DNA of 64,000 bases from positions 62,001 through 126,000 of the IMG/VR virus record IMGVR_UViG_3300030085_002431. One strand, given 5' to 3'. The notes under the pieces were generated by a model. That model was not told the DNA's origin, made no database searches, and saw nothing but the letters and a program-made list of their open reading frames with translations. The translations under genes were made by a program, and so were the position numbers. Numbering within the stretch: position 1 is the stretch's first letter; each line of letters begins with the position of its first letter. Shown piece by piece: positions 11,421 through 18,144 of the stretch.

Positions 11421-12467
11421 ATGTTTGGTTCCTATCACTATCACGAAATTATAAAGAGGACAATCGTTGCTTTTGGCACATTGTTCAACAATCTTTATAT
11501 CAAACACCAGGATGGCACTGGTGCTGATAATAGTGTCATAAAGGTTCCTATTTCATATGGTCCTGTTCAGAAGTTTCTTGCCAGATTAGATGAGAAACCA
11601 GATCTGAGAAGAAGAGTTGCAATTACTCTTCCTCGGATGTCATTTGAGATGACAGATATTGTTTATGATGCTTCCAGAAAAGTATCTTCCGTTCAGAAGT
11701 TTCAAGCAAATAGAGAAGGAGTTGGACCAATTCAGGTTTATATGCCTGCACCATACAATCTTAGTATTGAACTGAGTATTATAACTAAGTATCAAGATGA
11801 CATGCTCCAAATTTTGGAGCAGATTTTACCATACTTCCAACCACAGTTTAATCTAACAGTTGACTTGGTAAATTCTATTGGTGAAAAGAGAGATATTCCA
11901 ATCACCCTAGAAGGAATTAGTATGCAAGATGACTATGAGGGTGACTATACAACTAGAAGAAGTTTAGTATATACTCTTAGATTTACTGCTAAGACATCAA
12001 TCTTTGGTAAGATTGACGATAAGGAAGGACCAATCATCAAGAAAGTTACCGTTGATTATTATGGTGATACTGACAGACAAGAAGCTTCCAGACAGTTGAG
12101 ATATCAGGTAACACCAAGAGCAATTAAAGATTATAACAATGATAATACTACGACTCTTGAAGCAGACATCAGTGAAACACAAAGAACATTTGATGTATCT
12201 AATGCATCTCAGTTTGTAGTAGATTCATATATTATGATTAATGAAGAGTCAATGCTGATTACCAAGATTGCAGGTAATACATTGACGGTTACAAGAGGTA
12301 TGGATAAGACAATCAATGCCAAGCATCAAGTTGGTGATCAAATCAATATGATTAATGCTGCTGACGATGCACTCATTAACTATGATGATGAGTTTGGTTT
12401 CAATGAAGACCTCTTCGACTTTGGAGATGGACGACTGTATAGTCCCAGAAAGGATACTGACGTATGA
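11421..12467 (+). CDS. gp15: Tail terminator / sheath stabiliser gp15
   Basis: YHEIIKRTIVAFGTLFNN, KVPISYGP.QKFLARL, LPRMSFE, QILEQILPYFQP. Confidence 0.95.
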   Translation: MFGSYHYHEIIKRTIVAFGTLFNNLYIKHQDGTGADNSVIKVPISYGPVQKFLARLDEKPDLRRRVAITLPRMSFEMTDIVYDASRKVSSVQKFQANREGVGPIQVYMPAPYNLSIELSIITKYQDDMLQILEQILPYFQPQFNLTVDLVNSIGEKRDIPITLEGISMQDDYEGDYTTRRSLVYTLRFTAKTSIFGKIDDKEGPIIKKVTVDYYGDTDRQEASRQLRYQVTPRAIKDYNNDNTTTLEADISETQRTFDVSNASQFVVDSYIMINEESMLITKIAGNTLTVTRGMDKTINAKHQVGDQINMINAADDALINYDDEFGFNEDLFDFGDGRLYSPRKDTDV

Positions 12468-12889
12468 AGAATGATTTTGATGCGATAAACGATTCACTGG
12501 ATATAGAAGCAACTCCTACTGAGATTGTTTCTACTCCCGATACTTCTCTTAGAAAAACTCCTAAAAAGGGAGAAAAAGAAGAGACTGACTATGATTATGA
12601 TTATACTAGAGGGCAACTCTATAGTCTAATAGAAAAAGGACAAGAAGCAGTTGATGGAATCTTAGATATTGCTCAGCAGTCTGACTCTCCAAGAGCATAT
12701 GAAGTTGCTGGTCAACTTATTAAAAACGTTGCTGATACAACAGATAAGTTACTAGACCTTCAAGCAAAACTTAAAAAGTTAAAAGAAGAAGAAGCAGGTC
12801 CAAAGAATGTTACCAACAACAATACTATGTTTGTTGGTTCAACAGCAGAACTACAAAAACTGCTGAAGAAAGGTTTACCAAAAGAATAA
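12464..12889 (+). CDS. gp16: Terminase small subunit gp16
   Basis: DYDYTRGQLYSLIEKGQEA, SPRAYEVAGQLIK, FVGSTAELQK. Confidence 0.95.
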   Translation: MKNDFDAINDSLDIEATPTEIVSTPDTSLRKTPKKGEKEETDYDYDYTRGQLYSLIEKGQEAVDGILDIAQQSDSPRAYEVAGQLIKNVADTTDKLLDLQAKLKKLKEEEAGPKNVTNNNTMFVGSTAELQKLLKKGLPKE

Positions 12890-12912
12890 ATAGTTAAAAA
12901 TTGTATCTTCCA

Positions 12913-13620
12913 ATGAAATCTTTTGCGGAATTTATTGATGAATCGAAGAGTGGTGATAGTTCTCTGCGTGACTGGTTTAGCAAGAGTTCTTCTGATGATG
13001 GCACCCCTGGTTGGGTTCAGTTGGGTGGCAAATATGCAGGGAAACCCTGTGCAAGACAACCAGGACAAAAGACCAAACCAAAGTGTGGGTCTTCAAAAAT
13101 GAAGAGAAACCTCTCAAAGGAAGAGGAAGAAAAGGCATTTAGACGCAAGAACCGTGAAGACGGTAATCCAGATCGCAGAGGTAAAGCAAAGAACGTTGCT
13201 ACTGAAGAAACTGTTCTGGAGAAAGCAGGTGAAAAGGATGCGTGCTATAAAAAGGTCAAGTCTCGTTATAGAGTTTGGCCAAGTGCATACGCATCTGGAG
13301 CACTTGTAAAATGTCGCAAAGTTGGTGCTGCGAACTGGGGTAATAAAACTAAGAAGGAAGACTTCTCCCCAAAAGCAACAGCACTAGTGGAGAGATATAC
13401 TAAATTACAGGAGAGAGGCAAAACTTATCACGTCCGTTTTCAGTGGAGAGGGAAGTACGAAGGTATCCAAATATTCTTCCCAAGTCTGACAACACCCACT
13501 AAAATGGAAGTGTCTGCCCAGATTGAAAAAATCTATCCTGGTGCAACAGTAATCTCTTTTGGTCCACACTTTAGAGACCCAACCCAACCATTACTACATG
13601 TAGGAGAAGACAACCCATGA
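12913..13620 (+). CDS. Conserved basic modular phage protein, putative internal head protein
   Basis: Starts MKSFAEFIDE (T4 capsid-targeting-like); contains DACYKKVKSRYRVWPSAYASGALVKCRK; TAAATA at 12887. Confidence 0.6.
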   Translation: MKSFAEFIDESKSGDSSLRDWFSKSSSDDGTPGWVQLGGKYAGKPCARQPGQKTKPKCGSSKMKRNLSKEEEEKAFRRKNREDGNPDRRGKAKNVATEETVLEKAGEKDACYKKVKSRYRVWPSAYASGALVKCRKVGAANWGNKTKKEDFSPKATALVERYTKLQERGKTYHVRFQWRGKYEGIQIFFPSLTTPTKMEVSAQIEKIYPGATVISFGPHFRDPTQPLLHVGEDNP

Positions 13621-13793
13621 ATCCTGATGAAATAACACTTGATTCTCTTTCCAAGACGTTTGAATACGAGAAACAAGTACGAGAAATCGAGGACTGTGAT
13701 GATATTAAAACAATCAAAAATATTTGTAAAGCATATATTAAGTTATATCTAAAACAGCAAGAAACAGTTGCTGCAATTGGTTTAATGAGTTAA
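13617..13793 (+). CDS. 58-aa helix-loop-helix protein, NblA-like (phycobilisome degradation adaptor candidate)
   Basis: Below the track cutoff. MNPDEITLDSLSKTFEYEKQVREIEDCDDIKTIKNICKAYIKLYLKQQETVAAIGLMS; AGGAGA upstream; ATGA overlap with the previous stop. Confidence 0.5.
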   Translation: MNPDEITLDSLSKTFEYEKQVREIEDCDDIKTIKNICKAYIKLYLKQQETVAAIGLMS

Positions 13794-13802
13794 AAATTTT
13801 TC

Positions 13803-15452
13803 ATGGCTGACAAACATTATAAGGGCAATCCAAATCTCAAAGCAGAGAATGTCCAGGTTGAATTTACTGAAGAGCAAATTTCTGAGTATCTAAAATGCAA
13901 AGCAGATCCAGTTTATTTTGCACTTAAGTATATTCGTATCGTTTCTCTGGATGAGGGTTTGATTCCCTTTGACATGTATGACTTCCAGAAAGATTTAATT
14001 AAAAACTTTCACGAACAACGTTTTAATATTGCGAAACTACCTCGTCAGACTGGAAAGTCTACGACTGTGGTTTCGTATCTACTTCATTATGCACTGTTCA
14101 ACGATAATATTAGGATTGCAATCCTAGCAAACAAAGCAGAGACTGCAAGAGAACTGCTTCAGAGGTTGCAACTTTCTTATGAGAATTTACCAAAGTGGTT
14201 ACAGCAAGGTGTTGGTTCTTGGAACAAGGGTTCTCTAGAACTTGAGAATGGTTCTAAGATTATTGCTGCATCCACCTCCAGTTCTGCTGTCCGAGGAAAT
14301 TCATTTAACATCATTTTCTTGGACGAATTTGCGTTCATCCCAAACCATATTGCAGAGCAGTTCTTTAGTTCTGTATATCCAACGATTTCATCTGGTAAAA
14401 CAACCAAGGTTATTATCATTTCTACCCCTAACGGGATGAATATGTTCTATAAACTTTGGCACGATGCTGAACGTGGAAAGAATGATTACAAACCATTAGA
14501 AGTTCATTGGAGTGCAGTTCCTGGTAGGGATGCAAAATGGAAAGAAGAAACCATACGTAATACATCAGAGAGACAGTTTACTCAGGAGTTTGAGTGTGAG
14601 TTCCTGGGGTCTGTTGATACTCTTATTGCGCCTTCTAAACTTAGAAATATGGTCTATAGTGATCCTATACAAAGAAATAAGGGTCTAGATGTATATGAAG
14701 AACCAAAACCAGACCACCAATACTTAATGACAGTTGACGTTGCCAGAGGAACTGGAAAAGACTACTCTGCGTTTGTCATGTTTGATATTACAAGTTTCCC
14801 GTACAAGATTGTTGCAAAGTATAGGAATAATGAAATTAAACCAATGCTATTCCCAAATATTATTGATAGGGTAGGAAAGGCATATAATAAATCTTTCATT
14901 CTAGTTGAGGTCAATGATATTGGTGAACAGGTTTCCAGTATGCTTCAATTTGATTTGGAGTATGACAACCTTCTGATGTGTGCCATGAGAGGTAGAGCAG
15001 GTCAAATGGTTGGTCAGGGATTTTCTGGTAAGAAATCTCAGTTAGGAATTAAAATGTCCAAAACTGTAAAACAAGTTGGGTGCTCCAACTTAAAAACAGT
15101 TATTGAAGATGATAAGTTGCTTATAAATGATTATGATATCATCAGTGAATTAACAACATTTATTCAAAAGAATCAAACATTTGTAGCAGAAGATGGTTGC
15201 CATGACGACCTTGCTATGTGTCTTGTTATTTTCTCTTGGTTGATTGTTCAACCATACTTTAAAGAAATGACGGATAATGATATCCGAAAAAGAATTTATG
15301 AGGACCAAAGAGACCAGATTGAACAAGACATGGCACCATTCGGATTTGTAAGTGATGGTTTATCTGACGACAGTTCATTTGTAGATGCTGCTGGTGATAG
15401 ATGGCATACAGATGAGTATGGTGACCGTTCATATATGTGGGAGTATTATTGA
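13803..15452 (+). CDS. gp17: Terminase large subunit gp17
   Basis: PRQTGKST Walker A, IIFLDEFAF Walker B, ISTPNG, RNase H-like DVARG...HDDL. Confidence 0.98.
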   Translation: MADKHYKGNPNLKAENVQVEFTEEQISEYLKCKADPVYFALKYIRIVSLDEGLIPFDMYDFQKDLIKNFHEQRFNIAKLPRQTGKSTTVVSYLLHYALFNDNIRIAILANKAETARELLQRLQLSYENLPKWLQQGVGSWNKGSLELENGSKIIAASTSSSAVRGNSFNIIFLDEFAFIPNHIAEQFFSSVYPTISSGKTTKVIIISTPNGMNMFYKLWHDAERGKNDYKPLEVHWSAVPGRDAKWKEETIRNTSERQFTQEFECEFLGSVDTLIAPSKLRNMVYSDPIQRNKGLDVYEEPKPDHQYLMTVDVARGTGKDYSAFVMFDITSFPYKIVAKYRNNEIKPMLFPNIIDRVGKAYNKSFILVEVNDIGEQVSSMLQFDLEYDNLLMCAMRGRAGQMVGQGFSGKKSQLGIKMSKTVKQVGCSNLKTVIEDDKLLINDYDIISELTTFIQKNQTFVAEDGCHDDLAMCLVIFSWLIVQPYFKEMTDNDIRKRIYEDQRDQIEQDMAPFGFVSDGLSDDSSFVDAAGDRWHTDEYGDRSYMWEYY

Positions 15453-15676
15453 TGGACCTCGGTGATGATTTTTCTTTTTCATTTCCTAAAGATAGAAAAT
15501 GTAGAGTTTGTGGAAAGGTGAAAGACTTAGAGACTGGATTCTACAAAACTAGAAAAGAAAAAGGAAGTTCGTCAGGTGCGTATTCATATGAGTGTAAGGA
15601 TTGCACAATTAGGAGAGTTTCCAGAAAAAAGAATAAAATAAAGAAGTTTATAGAGAGTGACTATCCAGACTGGTAA
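15452..15676 (+). CDS. Small zinc-finger protein (CxxC...CxxC)
   Basis: CRVCG...YECKDC; TGATG overlap with the gp17 stop. Confidence 0.6.
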   Translation: MDLGDDFSFSFPKDRKCRVCGKVKDLETGFYKTRKEKGSSSGAYSYECKDCTIRRVSRKKNKIKKFIESDYPDW

Positions 15677-15759: not shown

Positions 15760-18144
15760 ATGGCGTTAAATTTAGTATCACCAGGAGTACAGATAAGAGA
15801 GGTTGACTTAACTGTTGGAGCAATTACTGCTGCTAACGATCAAGTCGGTGCCTTTGCTGCTCCATTTTCAAAAGGTCCTGTCAATGAGCCTGTTCTCATT
15901 ACAACCGAAGCAGAGCTTCTCGATACTTTTGGAAAACCATCTGAAACTGATGGTCAAAATGAGTACTGGTTGTCAGCATCTAACTACCTCTCTTACGGTG
16001 GTGTAATGAGAGTTGTAAGAGTAAATGGAACTTCTCTTAACAATGCAAACTCAGATTCTCTTGTAGATCTATCGATTTTAAACGAAGAGGATTACGACAC
16101 AAATCATACATCAGATACAACTTGGGAATATGCTGCAAGAACTCCTGGTTCTTGGGCAAATGACCTGAAGGTTTGTACCATTGATGGAATGGCAGACCAA
16201 ACCATTTCTGGAATTGGAACCACTGCTACATCTGTAACTACAACAACCACAGTAGCAACTAAAACTGGTGATGTTGGTATTACCACCAACTTAATCACAG
16301 GAATCACTACTTCTTCACTAACTGTTGGTGACGAAGTTGTCAACGCAAACTTCCCAGCAGATACTCAAATTCTATCAATTGGTGTATCTCAGATTATAGT
16401 AGATGATGATTCAACCAATACTGGTGCATTAACAGCAGAAACTTTCACATTTACACAAGATACAACATCAACTGTTGCTACTGATGTTGTTGTTGGTTAT
16501 GCTGTAACCCAGGCACTTTCTTCTAGTTATGCAGAAGATGGTGAAGTTAAAACCTTCAATGGACAAATTAGAGGAATTATTACTGGAATTGGCCAAGAAG
16601 AAATCTACGTTAAGGTTGTAGATAGAATTCCATCAAGTACTGGAATTCCTGAACCAATTGAGTATAAGAATCCTGGACAGGGAACTAATGCATACTCATT
16701 CCAGAATGATGCTACTACTGATGTTCACATCGTAACTCAAGCAGGAATTACTACAAATAGTTTTTCCAGCACAGAGGCAAATGACTGGTATGAAACTCAG
16801 AAGTTAGGTTTATCTAACCAAACCATCTTCTGGAAGTCTATTGCACCAAAACCTGGAACCTCACAGTATGCTGAAGATAGAAGTGGTAAGAATGACCAAA
16901 TTCATATTGTAGTTGTTGATGACACTGGTAAAGTAAGTGGTACTGCTGGTTCTATTTTAGAGAAGTATACATTCCTTTCTAAGGCATACGACGCAAAAAT
17001 TAGTCCAACACAGGGAATTTACTACAAGGATTATCTAGCAACAAACTCGCAAAATATTTTTGCTGGTGTTGCAAGAGCACTTGTTGGTTCAAGCATACTT
17101 CCTGGTTCTGGAGGTGCATTTACTGTACCACTAGGTTCATGGGGTTCTGAGGCACAGGGAACATCATTTAATGTTTCTGGTAGTCAGTCTTATAAGTTCA
17201 GCAATGGTGTTGATTACTCTTCAACAAATGGAATGGCACCTACCCTAGGGGATGTGAATACAGCTTATGAAATCTTTAGAAATCCAGCAGAATATGATAT
17301 TGATTATCTAATCATGGGTCCATCTGGTGGAGCCAGCATATTTGAGTCACAAGCAAAGGCAACAACTCTGATGTCTATTGCAGATGAAAGAAAGGATTGC
17401 ATAGCAGTTATTTCTCCACACAGAGGTGATATTGTTGCACAGGCAAATACCACCACTCAAACTGATAAAGTTATTGAGTTCTTTGAACCACTTCCTTCAT
17501 CTTCTTATGCAGTATTTGACAGTGGTTATAAGTATACATTCGATAGATTTAATAACAAGTTTATCTATCTAGCACTTAATAGTGATATTGCAGGATTGAT
17601 GGCAAGAACAACTGCCGAAGATTTTGCTTGGTTCTCACCTGCAGGTGCTAATAGAGGTGCAATTAATAATGCTATCAAACTTGCATATAATCCATCTAAG
17701 GCACAGAGAGATCTACTTTACACTAAGAGAATCAATCCAGTGATTGCTTCTTCTGGACAAGGTATTATTCTCTTTGGTGATAAAACTGCTCTTGGTTATG
17801 CTTCTGCGTTCGACAGAATTAACGTTCGTAAACTCTTCCTCGCACTTGAAGATTCAATCGAGGGAGCAGCAAGAGCACAACTCTTTGAGTTCAATGATAC
17901 CACCACAAGAACAAACTTTATCAATATTGTTGAACCTTTCCTGAGAGATGTTAAGGGTAAGAGAGGTATCACAGAATTCATTATCGTTTGTGACGAAACT
18001 AACAACACACCTGATGTTGTTGATTCAAATCAGTTTAAAGCTGATATCTTCGTGAAACCAGCAAGATCAATTAACTTCATTGGTCTCACCTTCGTTGCTA
18101 CCCGTACTGGTGTTAGCTTCTCCGAAGTAGTTGGAACTGTTTGA
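15760..18144 (+). CDS. gp18: Tail sheath protein gp18 (with a Thr-rich inserted domain)
   Basis: LVSPGVQIREVDLT, WFSPAG..RG, FDRINVRKLF, IFVKPARSINFI; TAAATA at 15716. Confidence 0.97.
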   Translation: MALNLVSPGVQIREVDLTVGAITAANDQVGAFAAPFSKGPVNEPVLITTEAELLDTFGKPSETDGQNEYWLSASNYLSYGGVMRVVRVNGTSLNNANSDSLVDLSILNEEDYDTNHTSDTTWEYAARTPGSWANDLKVCTIDGMADQTISGIGTTATSVTTTTTVATKTGDVGITTNLITGITTSSLTVGDEVVNANFPADTQILSIGVSQIIVDDDSTNTGALTAETFTFTQDTTSTVATDVVVGYAVTQALSSSYAEDGEVKTFNGQIRGIITGIGQEEIYVKVVDRIPSSTGIPEPIEYKNPGQGTNAYSFQNDATTDVHIVTQAGITTNSFSSTEANDWYETQKLGLSNQTIFWKSIAPKPGTSQYAEDRSGKNDQIHIVVVDDTGKVSGTAGSILEKYTFLSKAYDAKISPTQGIYYKDYLATNSQNIFAGVARALVGSSILPGSGGAFTVPLGSWGSEAQGTSFNVSGSQSYKFSNGVDYSSTNGMAPTLGDVNTAYEIFRNPAEYDIDYLIMGPSGGASIFESQAKATTLMSIADERKDCIAVISPHRGDIVAQANTTTQTDKVIEFFEPLPSSSYAVFDSGYKYTFDRFNNKFIYLALNSDIAGLMARTTAEDFAWFSPAGANRGAINNAIKLAYNPSKAQRDLLYTKRINPVIASSGQGIILFGDKTALGYASAFDRINVRKLFLALEDSIEGAARAQLFEFNDTTTRTNFINIVEPFLRDVKGKRGITEFIIVCDETNNTPDVVDSNQFKADIFVKPARSINFIGLTFVATRTGVSFSEVVGTV

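What the first reader, a model, noticed from the sequence alone, without database searches (positions are those of the whole stretch)
13617..13793. Unannotated NblA-like micro-ORF between the terminase genes
Seen: a 58-aa ORF with an RBS, coupled to the upstream gene. Its pattern is L.SLSK.FEYEK..REI....D...IK...K....Y..Q, with two amphipathic helices. Known: NblA is a roughly 60-aa helix-loop-helix adaptor that targets phycobilisomes to Clp proteases, and cyanophage NblAs exist. From recall, picocyanobacterial NblA-like proteins have L...Q.FE.E+..R.I....D...L...AK......Q. Inference: a late-expressed NblA-like gene in the morphogenesis module could release amino acids from antennae during capsid synthesis.
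Basis: partly seen in the sequence, partly recalled or inferred. Interest (0 to 1): 0.6.

Follow-up and report, generated by a model that had tools for sequence, protein, structure and literature searches.

The report
NblA-like gene beside cyanophage terminase
A real, conserved 58-residue gene lies between the two terminase genes of a marine T4-like cyanophage. It belongs to a cyanophage family already proposed in the literature to be a distant relative of NblA, the adaptor that marks the cyanobacterial light-harvesting antenna for degradation, so this is a correct call of a known kind whose function is still untested.

Summary
The ORF at 13617-13793 (+) is real. It is 58 aa long and has a GGAG 10 nt upstream. 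Its ATG overlaps the stop of a 239-aa ORF (ATGA). It lies between gp16 and gp17. It is under purifying selection (median dN/dS 0.31) and is intact in 81 of 81 related loci.

It is a full-length member of phrog_27081 (E 8.5e-26). That is a large family of 54-64-aa proteins found only in cyanophages. Members include S-TIM5 H6WG80, S-SCSM1 ORF237 and S-SCSM2R ORF118, all already published as predicted NblA.

Evidence for the NblA link:
- No HMMER-level match to Pfam NblA (PF04485).
- My profile-profile score is weak: 17% probability, P 0.0014, full length.
- The published HHpred result for the S-SCSM1 homologue is about 95%.
- A pLDDT-93 helix-hairpin model ranks solved NblA chains 1st, 2nd and 6th of 48,161 chains.
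- A homodimer prediction passes its controls (0.45 against 0.00).

The gene sits inside the virion module in two recurring slots. This fits late expression but does not show it.

It is a new member of a known kind, and its function is untested.

The parts
13617..13793 (+). 58-aa NblA-like ORF (P0001), a helix-loop-helix protein with helices 11-26 and 30-53
   Evidence: phrog_27081, E 8.5e-26; pLDDT 93; NblA chains ranked 1, 2 and 6; homodimer prediction; dN/dS 0.31
13603..13606 (+). GGAG Shine-Dalgarno-like site, 10 nt upstream of the ATG
   Evidence: read from the sequence
13617..13620 (+). ATGA start/stop overlap with the upstream ORF, which suggests translational coupling
12901..13620 (+). 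239-aa ORF of unknown function (phrog_727). It is the conserved upstream partner of the NblA-like gene in the gp16-gp17 slot. Its true start may be the ATG at 12913.
   Evidence: (22 of 80 loci share the order gp15-gp16-ORF239-this gene-gp17)
12464..12889 (+). gp16, terminase small subunit
   Evidence: PF11053; phrog_445, E 5.5e-54
13803..15452 (+). gp17, terminase large subunit; starts 9 nt after the NblA-like stop
12885..12892 (+). AATAAATA, which resembles a T4-type late promoter (NATAAATA) and overlaps the gp16 stop. A lead only.
   Evidence: The full TATAAATA motif is not enriched in the window.

Best explanation
The ORF encodes a small helix-loop-helix protein that forms a homodimer. It belongs to the cyanomyovirus branch of NblA-like proteins, alongside S-TIM5 H6WG80, S-SCSM1 ORF237 and S-SCSM2R ORF118.

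The most likely function is that of a proteolysis adaptor during infection. One surface would bind host phycobiliproteins and another would recruit the host ClpC-ClpP protease. The antenna, and possibly other host proteins, would then be degraded, and the released amino acids would feed phage protein synthesis.

In this phage the gene is read together with the string gp15 - gp16 - ORF239 - gp17. Its product would therefore be made when virion and packaging proteins are made.

Shown here: a real gene under purifying selection, family membership, a hairpin fold closest to solved NblA, a predicted dimer, restriction to cyanophages, and recurrent placement in the virion module.

Inferred: homology to NblA, binding to phycobiliproteins and ClpC, and late timing.
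For: - Family: phrog_27081 at E 8.5e-26. The ORF is 48-61% identical to ORFs in 25 phage records, all Synechococcus phages. Two of these are annotated NblA or phycobilisome degradation protein.
- Literature: S-TIM5 H6WG80 is in the 2019 NblA data set. S-SCSM1 ORF237 gave HHpred 95.5% to Nostoc NblA and 95% to S. elongatus NblA, at E 0.24 and 0.27. S-SCSM2R ORF118 is listed as nblA.
- Language-model features: the nearest cluster bearing any Pfam family is PF04485 NblA, at 0.75, which is a lead only.
- Profile-profile: the family against classical NblA aligns over the full length, 53 columns, at P 0.0014. L8 and F15 fall on the L and F of the classical L-S/T-L-E-Q-x-F motif. Only 3 of 300 column shuffles reach the observed score.
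- Dimer: score 0.45 against a best control of 0.00. That mark was reached by 20 of 30 proteins solved as pairs of one chain and by 1 of 23 solved as single chains. The runs agree in at least 92% of contacts, and the partner's pLDDT is at least 68.
- Distribution: 2,013 T4-like phage records carry a gp17 homologue, yet the ORF occurs only in cyanophages.
- Function of a viral NblA: in S-TIP37, deleting nblA lengthens the latent period and cuts production of morphogenesis proteins (PMC12695635).
Against: - Pfam PF04485 gives no hit at E up to 10 for the ORF, for 13 plus 150 family members, for the whole phage genome, or for five related phage genomes.
- An hmmsearch of PDB sequences with the family profile finds no NblA.
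- hhalign probability is only 17% against classical NblA and nil against the validated T7-like cyanophage NblAs. Those two recognised groups match each other at 91%, E 9e-7.
- Foldseek finds nothing in the PDB.
- The E-Q of the classical N-terminal motif is S-K in this family.
- No member of this myovirus family has been tested experimentally.
- The host of this phage is unknown. The genome has no cpeT or bilin reductase gene to tie it to phycobilisomes.
Confidence: 0.6

Rival explanations
1. It is a small accessory protein of virion assembly or DNA packaging, for example a chaperone or a partner of the terminase or neck. It merely shares the very common helical-hairpin dimer shape with NblA.
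For: In 80 related loci the gene lies almost always inside the structural module. In 22 it sits between ORF239 and gp17. In about 45 it sits directly after a small virion structural protein (phrog_473) and before gp13. It overlaps the upstream gene in both slots. Sequence-level support for NblA is sub-significant.
Against: The gene is patchy, present in 25 of several hundred cyanomyovirus records, and absent from all other T4-like phages. A core assembly factor would be expected more widely. In S-TIM5, S-SKS1 and S-SCSM1 it sits among small accessory genes, host-like genes or a helicase, not among structural genes. The best structural matches are NblA itself over nearly its whole length.
Confidence: 0.15
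2. It is a true NblA relative whose target has changed. It would act as a Clp adaptor or disassembly factor for host proteins other than phycobilisomes, or it would work without ClpC.
For: Degradation directed by the S-TIP37 NblA is not confined to phycobilisome proteins, and nblA occurs in Prochlorococcus and its phages, which lack phycobilisomes (PMC12695635). The classical E-Q of the N-terminal motif is replaced by S-K in this family. S-SCSM1 and S-SCSM2R also infect Prochlorococcus.
Against: All 25 cultured carriers were isolated on phycobilisome-bearing Synechococcus. Nothing here points to another target.
Confidence: 0.15
3. It is an unrelated small regulator or anti-defence protein.
For: The family profile gives a weak 20-residue match to the anti-CRISPR AcrIIA15 (E 0.07). 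Small helical dimers are typical of such proteins.
Against: The match is not significant and covers only helix 1. Structural ranking favours NblA. The family is confined to cyanophages.
Confidence: 0.05

Closest known systems
Predicted NblA of T4-like and other cyanomyoviruses: S-TIM5 H6WG80 (Nadel et al. 2019), S-SCSM1 ORF237 (PMC9602691), S-SCSM2R ORF118 (PMC12801897); phrog_27081
   Same: Same family: 48-50% identity over the full length (up to 61% to the S-SM2 homologue, which is annotated only as hypothetical), the same size of 54-60 aa, and the same conserved F-E-Y-E-K and K-L-Y-L-K-Q-Q-E blocks. The BFVD model of the S-SCSM1 protein superposes at TM 0.85-0.90.
   Different: The location differs. 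Here the gene lies between ORF239 and gp17. In S-SM2 and Bellamy it lies before gp13, in S-SCSM1 before a helicase, and in S-TIM5 among host-like genes. None of these proteins has been tested experimentally.
Classical cyanobacterial NblA (Pfam PF04485; PDB 1OJH, 2Q8V, 3CS5)
   Different: There is no HMMER match to PF04485. hhalign probability is 17%. E-Q in the L-S/T-L-E-Q-x-F motif is S-K here. There is no W-containing C-terminal tail.
NblA of T7-like cyanophages (S-TIP37), experimentally validated (PMC12695635)
   Same: A viral auxiliary gene in marine picocyanobacterial phages. It is small and overlaps its upstream gene. The proposed role is to feed phage protein synthesis.
   Different: No detectable profile similarity to this family (Prob 0.1%), whereas S-TIP37-type NblA matches classical NblA at 91%. 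It lies in the DNA replication and metabolism cluster downstream of the exonuclease gene, not in the morphogenesis module.
NblA of freshwater Microcystis phages (Ma-LMM01, MaMV-DC)
   Same: A myovirus-borne nblA placed among phage genes.
   Different: Those are clear PF04485 members with host-like sequence. They give no profile match to the window's family (Prob 0.3%). They lie between the nrdA and nrdB region genes.

Membership tests
phrog_27081 / cyanomyovirus NblA-like family | Full-length, significant match to the family profile and to named members | tested here: met
   E 8.5e-26 over residues 1-56 of 59 profile positions; 48-61% identity to S-SM2, Bellamy, S-SKS1, S-TIM5 and S-SCSM1; S-TIM5 H6WG80 is the same ORF family
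NblA (Pfam PF04485) | Score above the Pfam gathering cut-off (25 bits) | tested here: not met
   No hit at E up to 10 for the ORF, 163 family members, the whole phage genome or five related genomes. The authors of the 2019 study also note that marine cyanophage NblAs score low against this profile.
NblA (Pfam PF04485) | Profile-profile homology to recognised NblA | tested here: inconclusive
   hhalign without secondary structure gives Prob 17%, P 0.0014 over 53 columns against classical NblA. It gives nothing against T7-like phage NblA. The positive control, classical against T7-like, gives 91%. Only 3 of 300 shuffles reach the score. Published HHpred for the S-SCSM1 homologue is 95.5% at E 0.24.
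NblA (Pfam PF04485) | A helix-loop-helix monomer of about 60 residues that superposes on solved NblA | tested here: met
NblA (Pfam PF04485) | Functional unit is a dimer | tested here: met
   This is a prediction only. Score 0.45 against a best control of 0.00. The mark was reached by 20 of 30 solved homo-pairs and by 1 of 23 single chains. Contact agreement is at least 92% and pLDDT at least 68. The interface runs along helix 2 (33-51) with helix 1. The geometry was not compared with the crystal dimers.
NblA (Pfam PF04485) | Conserved N-terminal motif (L-S/T-L-E-Q-x-F) reported to bind ClpC | tested here: inconclusive
   L8 and F15 are invariant in the family and align with the L and F of the motif. 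The E-Q is S-K. The role of the motif is taken from PMC4103541, which cites Karradt 2008.
NblA (Pfam PF04485) | C-terminal motif that binds phycobiliproteins | not testable with these tools
   The family has a strongly conserved K-L-Y-L-K-Q-Q-E block in helix 2. Whether it is equivalent to the NblA binding residues cannot be established by sequence.
NblA (Pfam PF04485) | Occurs in phycobilisome-bearing organisms and their viruses | tested here: met
   All 25 phage records are Synechococcus phages. None of about 1,540 non-cyanobacterial T4-like records carries it. The only hits in prokaryote genomes are five MAG contigs that I take for mis-binned cyanophage (not checked).
NblA (Pfam PF04485) | Induces phycobilisome degradation (bleaching) | not testable with these tools
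   No experiment exists for any member of this myovirus family. It has been shown only for other viral NblAs.

The most novel reading that the evidence does not exclude
The cyanomyovirus NblA-like proteins may form a separate, very abundant clade that is built into late virion operons at two alternative slots: before gp13, and between gp16 and gp17. This clade has replaced the classical E-Q of the ClpC-binding motif. It would then be a late-timed antenna or proteome-degradation switch, with a mode of recruitment or a set of targets different from both host NblA and the middle-expressed NblA of T7-like cyanophages.
Probability: 0.25. Interest if true: 0.55.

Novelty: new member of a known kind. 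Interest (0 to 1): 0.3.

Why it matters
Viral NblA was recently shown to speed up infection by a T7-like cyanophage and to lower light harvesting by its oceanic picocyanobacterial host (PMC12695635). T4-like cyanophages are the other major group of marine cyanophages. The family found here is very common in marine metagenomes: 5,844 proteins in a profile search and at least 534 IMG/VR loci. If it truly acts as NblA, antenna degradation by myoviruses would add to that global effect. Its placement in the late structural operon would also tie antenna breakdown to the peak demand for amino acids. As a finding it is a correct annotation rather than a discovery, because the family has carried the NblA label since 2019-2022. 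What is missing is an experiment.

Tried and rejected
- HMMER-level tests against Pfam and NCBIfam NblA models found nothing. The same was true against PDB sequences. This does not exclude NblA, since the published marine phage NblAs also score low.
- Foldseek against the PDB and the ESM-Atlas shape search gave nothing.
- hhalign against a narrow Microcystis-phage NblA alignment gave Prob 0.3%. Against T7-like cyanophage NblAs it gave Prob 0.1%.
- Picocyanobacterial NblAs are said in PMC9602691 to cluster with this family, but I could not reach them. The single genome-contig scan returned only MAG contigs labelled as non-cyanobacterial taxa, which I take for mis-binned phage without checking. 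Plasmid loci gave only W handles, which have no relatives. The psbA cluster listed no cyanobacterial genome.
- As a yardstick I folded the validated S-TIP37 NblA. The monomer model was poor (pLDDT 70, helix 2 broken) and did not retrieve PDB NblA in the top 50. It shows that the search does not return NblA for just any small cyanophage helical protein, but it gives no usable Z scale.
- Circular-shift controls for hhalign were not a valid null, because local alignment still finds the same segments.
- RNA evidence is weak. Contigs from two RNA libraries bridge the junction between ORF239 and this ORF, but DNA carry-over cannot be excluded and contigs show no level or strand. I do not count this as proof of transcription.
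- The sigma-70 and terminator scans were at chance level. TATAAATA is not enriched in the window.
- The weak AcrIIA15 match (E 0.07) was rejected as chance.
- No alternative genetic code was used.

Full report
**1. The observation.** The window carries an ATG-started ORF of 58 codons at 13617-13793 on the + strand. A GGAG lies 10 nt upstream of the start. The ATG overlaps the TGA of a 239-aa ORF (12901-13620) as ATGA, and the next gene starts 9 nt after its stop. The neighbours are T4-type late genes, all on the + strand and tightly packed:
- gp15 tail sheath stabiliser (11421-12467)
- gp16 small terminase (12464-12889)
- the 239-aa ORF (phrog_727, function unknown)
- the 58-aa ORF
- gp17 large terminase (13803-15452)
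- gp18 tail sheath (15760-18144)

The window is bases 62001-126000 of a 250,613-bp IMG/VR virus record, rated complete by CheckV. That record also carries psbA and psbD.

**2. It is a real gene.**
- The protein matches PHROG family phrog_27081 over its full length (E 8.5e-26).
- A word-indexed profile search found 5,844 related proteins, nearly all 54-64 aa and from marine metagenomes.
- An exhaustive HMMER search of 1.84 billion cluster representatives found 254 clusters at E up to 0.001.
- In the 80 best loci plus the window the frame is intact in all 81. Median pairwise dN/dS is 0.31 over 926 pairs with dS between 0.05 and 1.5.
- A strain variant in a metagenome from another study differs at six positions inside the ORF, and all six are synonymous. 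A second independent metagenome holds an identical 1.8-kb stretch.
- There is one copy in the phage genome.

**3. Who has it.**
- tblastn against 50,697 phage records finds 25 records, all phages isolated on Synechococcus: S-SM2 (61%), Bellamy, S-SKS1, S-TIM5 and its relatives, S-SCSM1, S-SCSM2R, S-SRM01, S-B05, S-B43 and others.
- The gp17 of the window finds 2,013 T4-like records, about 1,540 of them from non-cyanobacterial hosts, and none of those has the ORF.
- The collection holds too few Prochlorococcus phage records for their zero count to mean anything.
- In 185,579 prokaryote species genomes the only hits are five MAG contigs labelled as archaea, Bacteroidota, Planctomycetota or Alphaproteobacteria. 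I take these for mis-binned cyanophage DNA, which I did not check. The 2019 study reported mis-binning of this kind.

**4. What the literature already says.**
- Nadel et al. (bioRxiv 10.1101/494369) listed eleven marine cyanophages with unannotated nblA. Their alignment contains H6WG80 of S-TIM5, and its visible residues are those of the S-TIM5 ORF that I found at 48% identity.
- The S-SCSM1 paper (PMC9602691) predicted ORF237 (208951-209115, exactly my hit) as NblA by HHpred. Probabilities were 95.5% for Nostoc PCC 7120 NblA and 95% for S. elongatus NblA, at E 0.24 and 0.27. The paper found seven myovirus homologues.
- S-SCSM2R ORF118 is listed as nblA (PMC12801897).
- No member of this myovirus family has been tested.
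- Viral NblA function has been shown for other lineages: a MAG-derived gene complements an S. elongatus mutant, and deleting nblA in the T7-like phage S-TIP37 lengthens the latent period from 3 h to 8-10 h and reduces synthesis of morphogenesis proteins (PMC12695635).

**5. My own tests of the NblA link: sequence.**
- The Pfam model PF04485 gives nothing at E up to 10. This holds for the ORF, for 13 and then 150 diverse family members, for the whole phage genome and for five related phage genomes. NCBIfam is also blank, and so is an hmmsearch of PDB sequences with the family profile.
- For a profile-profile test I assembled real NblAs from tool output. The sources were ten plasmid-borne NblA/ycf18 genes of Nostoc, Acaryochloris, Chroococcidiopsis and Kovacikia, the Microcystis phage type, and 56 distinct T7-like cyanophage NblAs seeded with the validated S-TIP37 gene.
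- hhalign of 193 family members against classical NblA gives Prob 17%, P 0.0014 and 53 aligned columns. That is essentially the full length. The invariant L8 and F15 fall on the L and F of L-S/T-L-E-Q-x-F.
- Against T7-like phage NblA there is no match. The two recognised NblA groups match each other at Prob 91%, E 9e-7.
- Only 3 of 300 column shuffles reach the observed score.
- Sequence alone therefore leaves the homology suggestive but unproven.

**6. My own tests of the NblA link: structure.**
- AlphaFold2 with 123 family sequences gives a confident hairpin: pLDDT 93, helices 11-26 and 30-53.
- Foldseek finds nothing in the PDB.
- All three NblA chains listed among the matches stand in the top six and are covered end to end. 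The other top rows are fragments of large proteins. I take this as the strongest independent support.
- BFVD returns the S-SCSM1 protein (TM 0.85-0.90).
- Language-model features place PF04485 as the nearest Pfam-bearing cluster, at 0.75, which is a lead only.
- A homodimer prediction passes its controls: score 0.45 against a best control of 0.00. The mark was reached by 20 of 30 proteins solved as homo-pairs and by 1 of 23 solved as single chains. The runs agree in at least 92% of contacts, and the partner's pLDDT is at least 68. The interface is symmetrical along helix 2 with helix 1.
- A natural 134-aa protein with two tandem copies of the domain (P0127) fits a dimeric unit.

**7. Context and timing.** Among the 80 best IMG/VR loci, 22 share the window's order gp15 - gp16 - ORF239 - this gene - gp17, with gp17 only 73-99% identical. 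About 45 have the gene directly after a small virion structural protein (phrog_473) and upstream of gp13, as in S-SM2 and Bellamy. A few resemble S-SCSM1 (next to a helicase) or S-TIM5. These 80 loci are the ones most similar to the query, so the counts are not an unbiased census.

The gene behaves like a mobile accessory cassette:
- Its distribution is patchy.
- It occupies several different slots.
- Its G+C is 0.30, against 0.38 for the window.

It lands predominantly inside the late morphogenesis string, overlapping the gene before it. This fits late co-expression. An AATAAATA resembling the T4-type late promoter overlaps the gp16 stop. However, the timing is inferred. Promoter and terminator scans are at chance. 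The only RNA evidence is short contigs from two RNA libraries that bridge the upstream junction, and these could be DNA carry-over. In S-TIP37, nblA belongs to the replication and metabolism cluster.

**8. Verdict.** The best explanation is a dimeric NblA-like proteolysis adaptor of the cyanomyovirus type. My confidence is about 0.6 for the function and about 0.95 for family membership. The main rivals are a virion-assembly accessory protein with a look-alike fold (0.15) and an NblA relative with other targets (0.15).

This is a new member of a known, already published kind. The modestly new points are the recurrent gp16-gp17 slot, the predominance of structural-module placement, and the replacement of E-Q by S-K in the N-terminal motif.

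Noticed in passing
G000:C1:163609-164465 (outside the window; loci L017, L018): The phage psbD matches the Photo_RC model in two separate open frames, 163609-163821 and 163857-164465. psbA, by contrast, is one intact 360-aa ORF. The split could be a frameshift, an assembly error or an insertion.
   Followed up: no
window 12901-13620: This is the 239-aa ORF between gp16 and the NblA-like gene. It belongs to phrog_727 (unknown function), is rich in Lys/Arg/Glu, and gives only a weak DUF5872 hit. It is the conserved upstream partner in 22 of 80 related loci. The listed TTG start may be wrong, since an ATG lies at 12913.
   Followed up: partly
window 12885-12892: AATAAATA, which resembles a T4-type late promoter (NATAAATA), overlaps the gp16 stop codon just upstream of the 239-aa ORF. 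It is a single occurrence without statistical support.
   Followed up: partly
L003:3764-4177 (S-SKS1 SWZG_00226); proteins P0135, P0144, P0146: In some phages the NblA-like domain is fused in one frame to a roughly 70-aa domain of phrog_3426 (unknown function). The fusion occurs on either side: N-terminal in S-SKS1 and P0146, C-terminal in P0135 and P0144. The window's genome has no phrog_3426 match.
   Followed up: partly
protein P0127 (134 aa): A natural tandem duplication carries two NblA-like domains in one protein. This fits a dimeric functional unit.
   Followed up: no
L006-L010 (genome contigs): Contigs carrying this gene are binned in MAGs labelled Methanobacteriota, Euryarchaeota, Crocinitomicaceae, Pirellulaceae and Acetobacteraceae. 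They are most likely mis-binned cyanophage DNA. By their isolate names, three appear to come from a freshwater lake series, which would place the family in freshwater cyanophages as well.
   Followed up: no
window 15437-15676: A 79-aa ORF overlaps the end of gp17 by 16 nt. It has two Cys pairs (C-x-x-C ... C-x-x-C), which suggests a small zinc-ribbon protein between gp17 and gp18.
   Followed up: no
window 13617-13793: The G+C of the ORF is 0.30, against 0.35-0.43 for its neighbours and 0.38 for the window. This fits an inserted cassette, though the ORF is short.
   Followed up: partly
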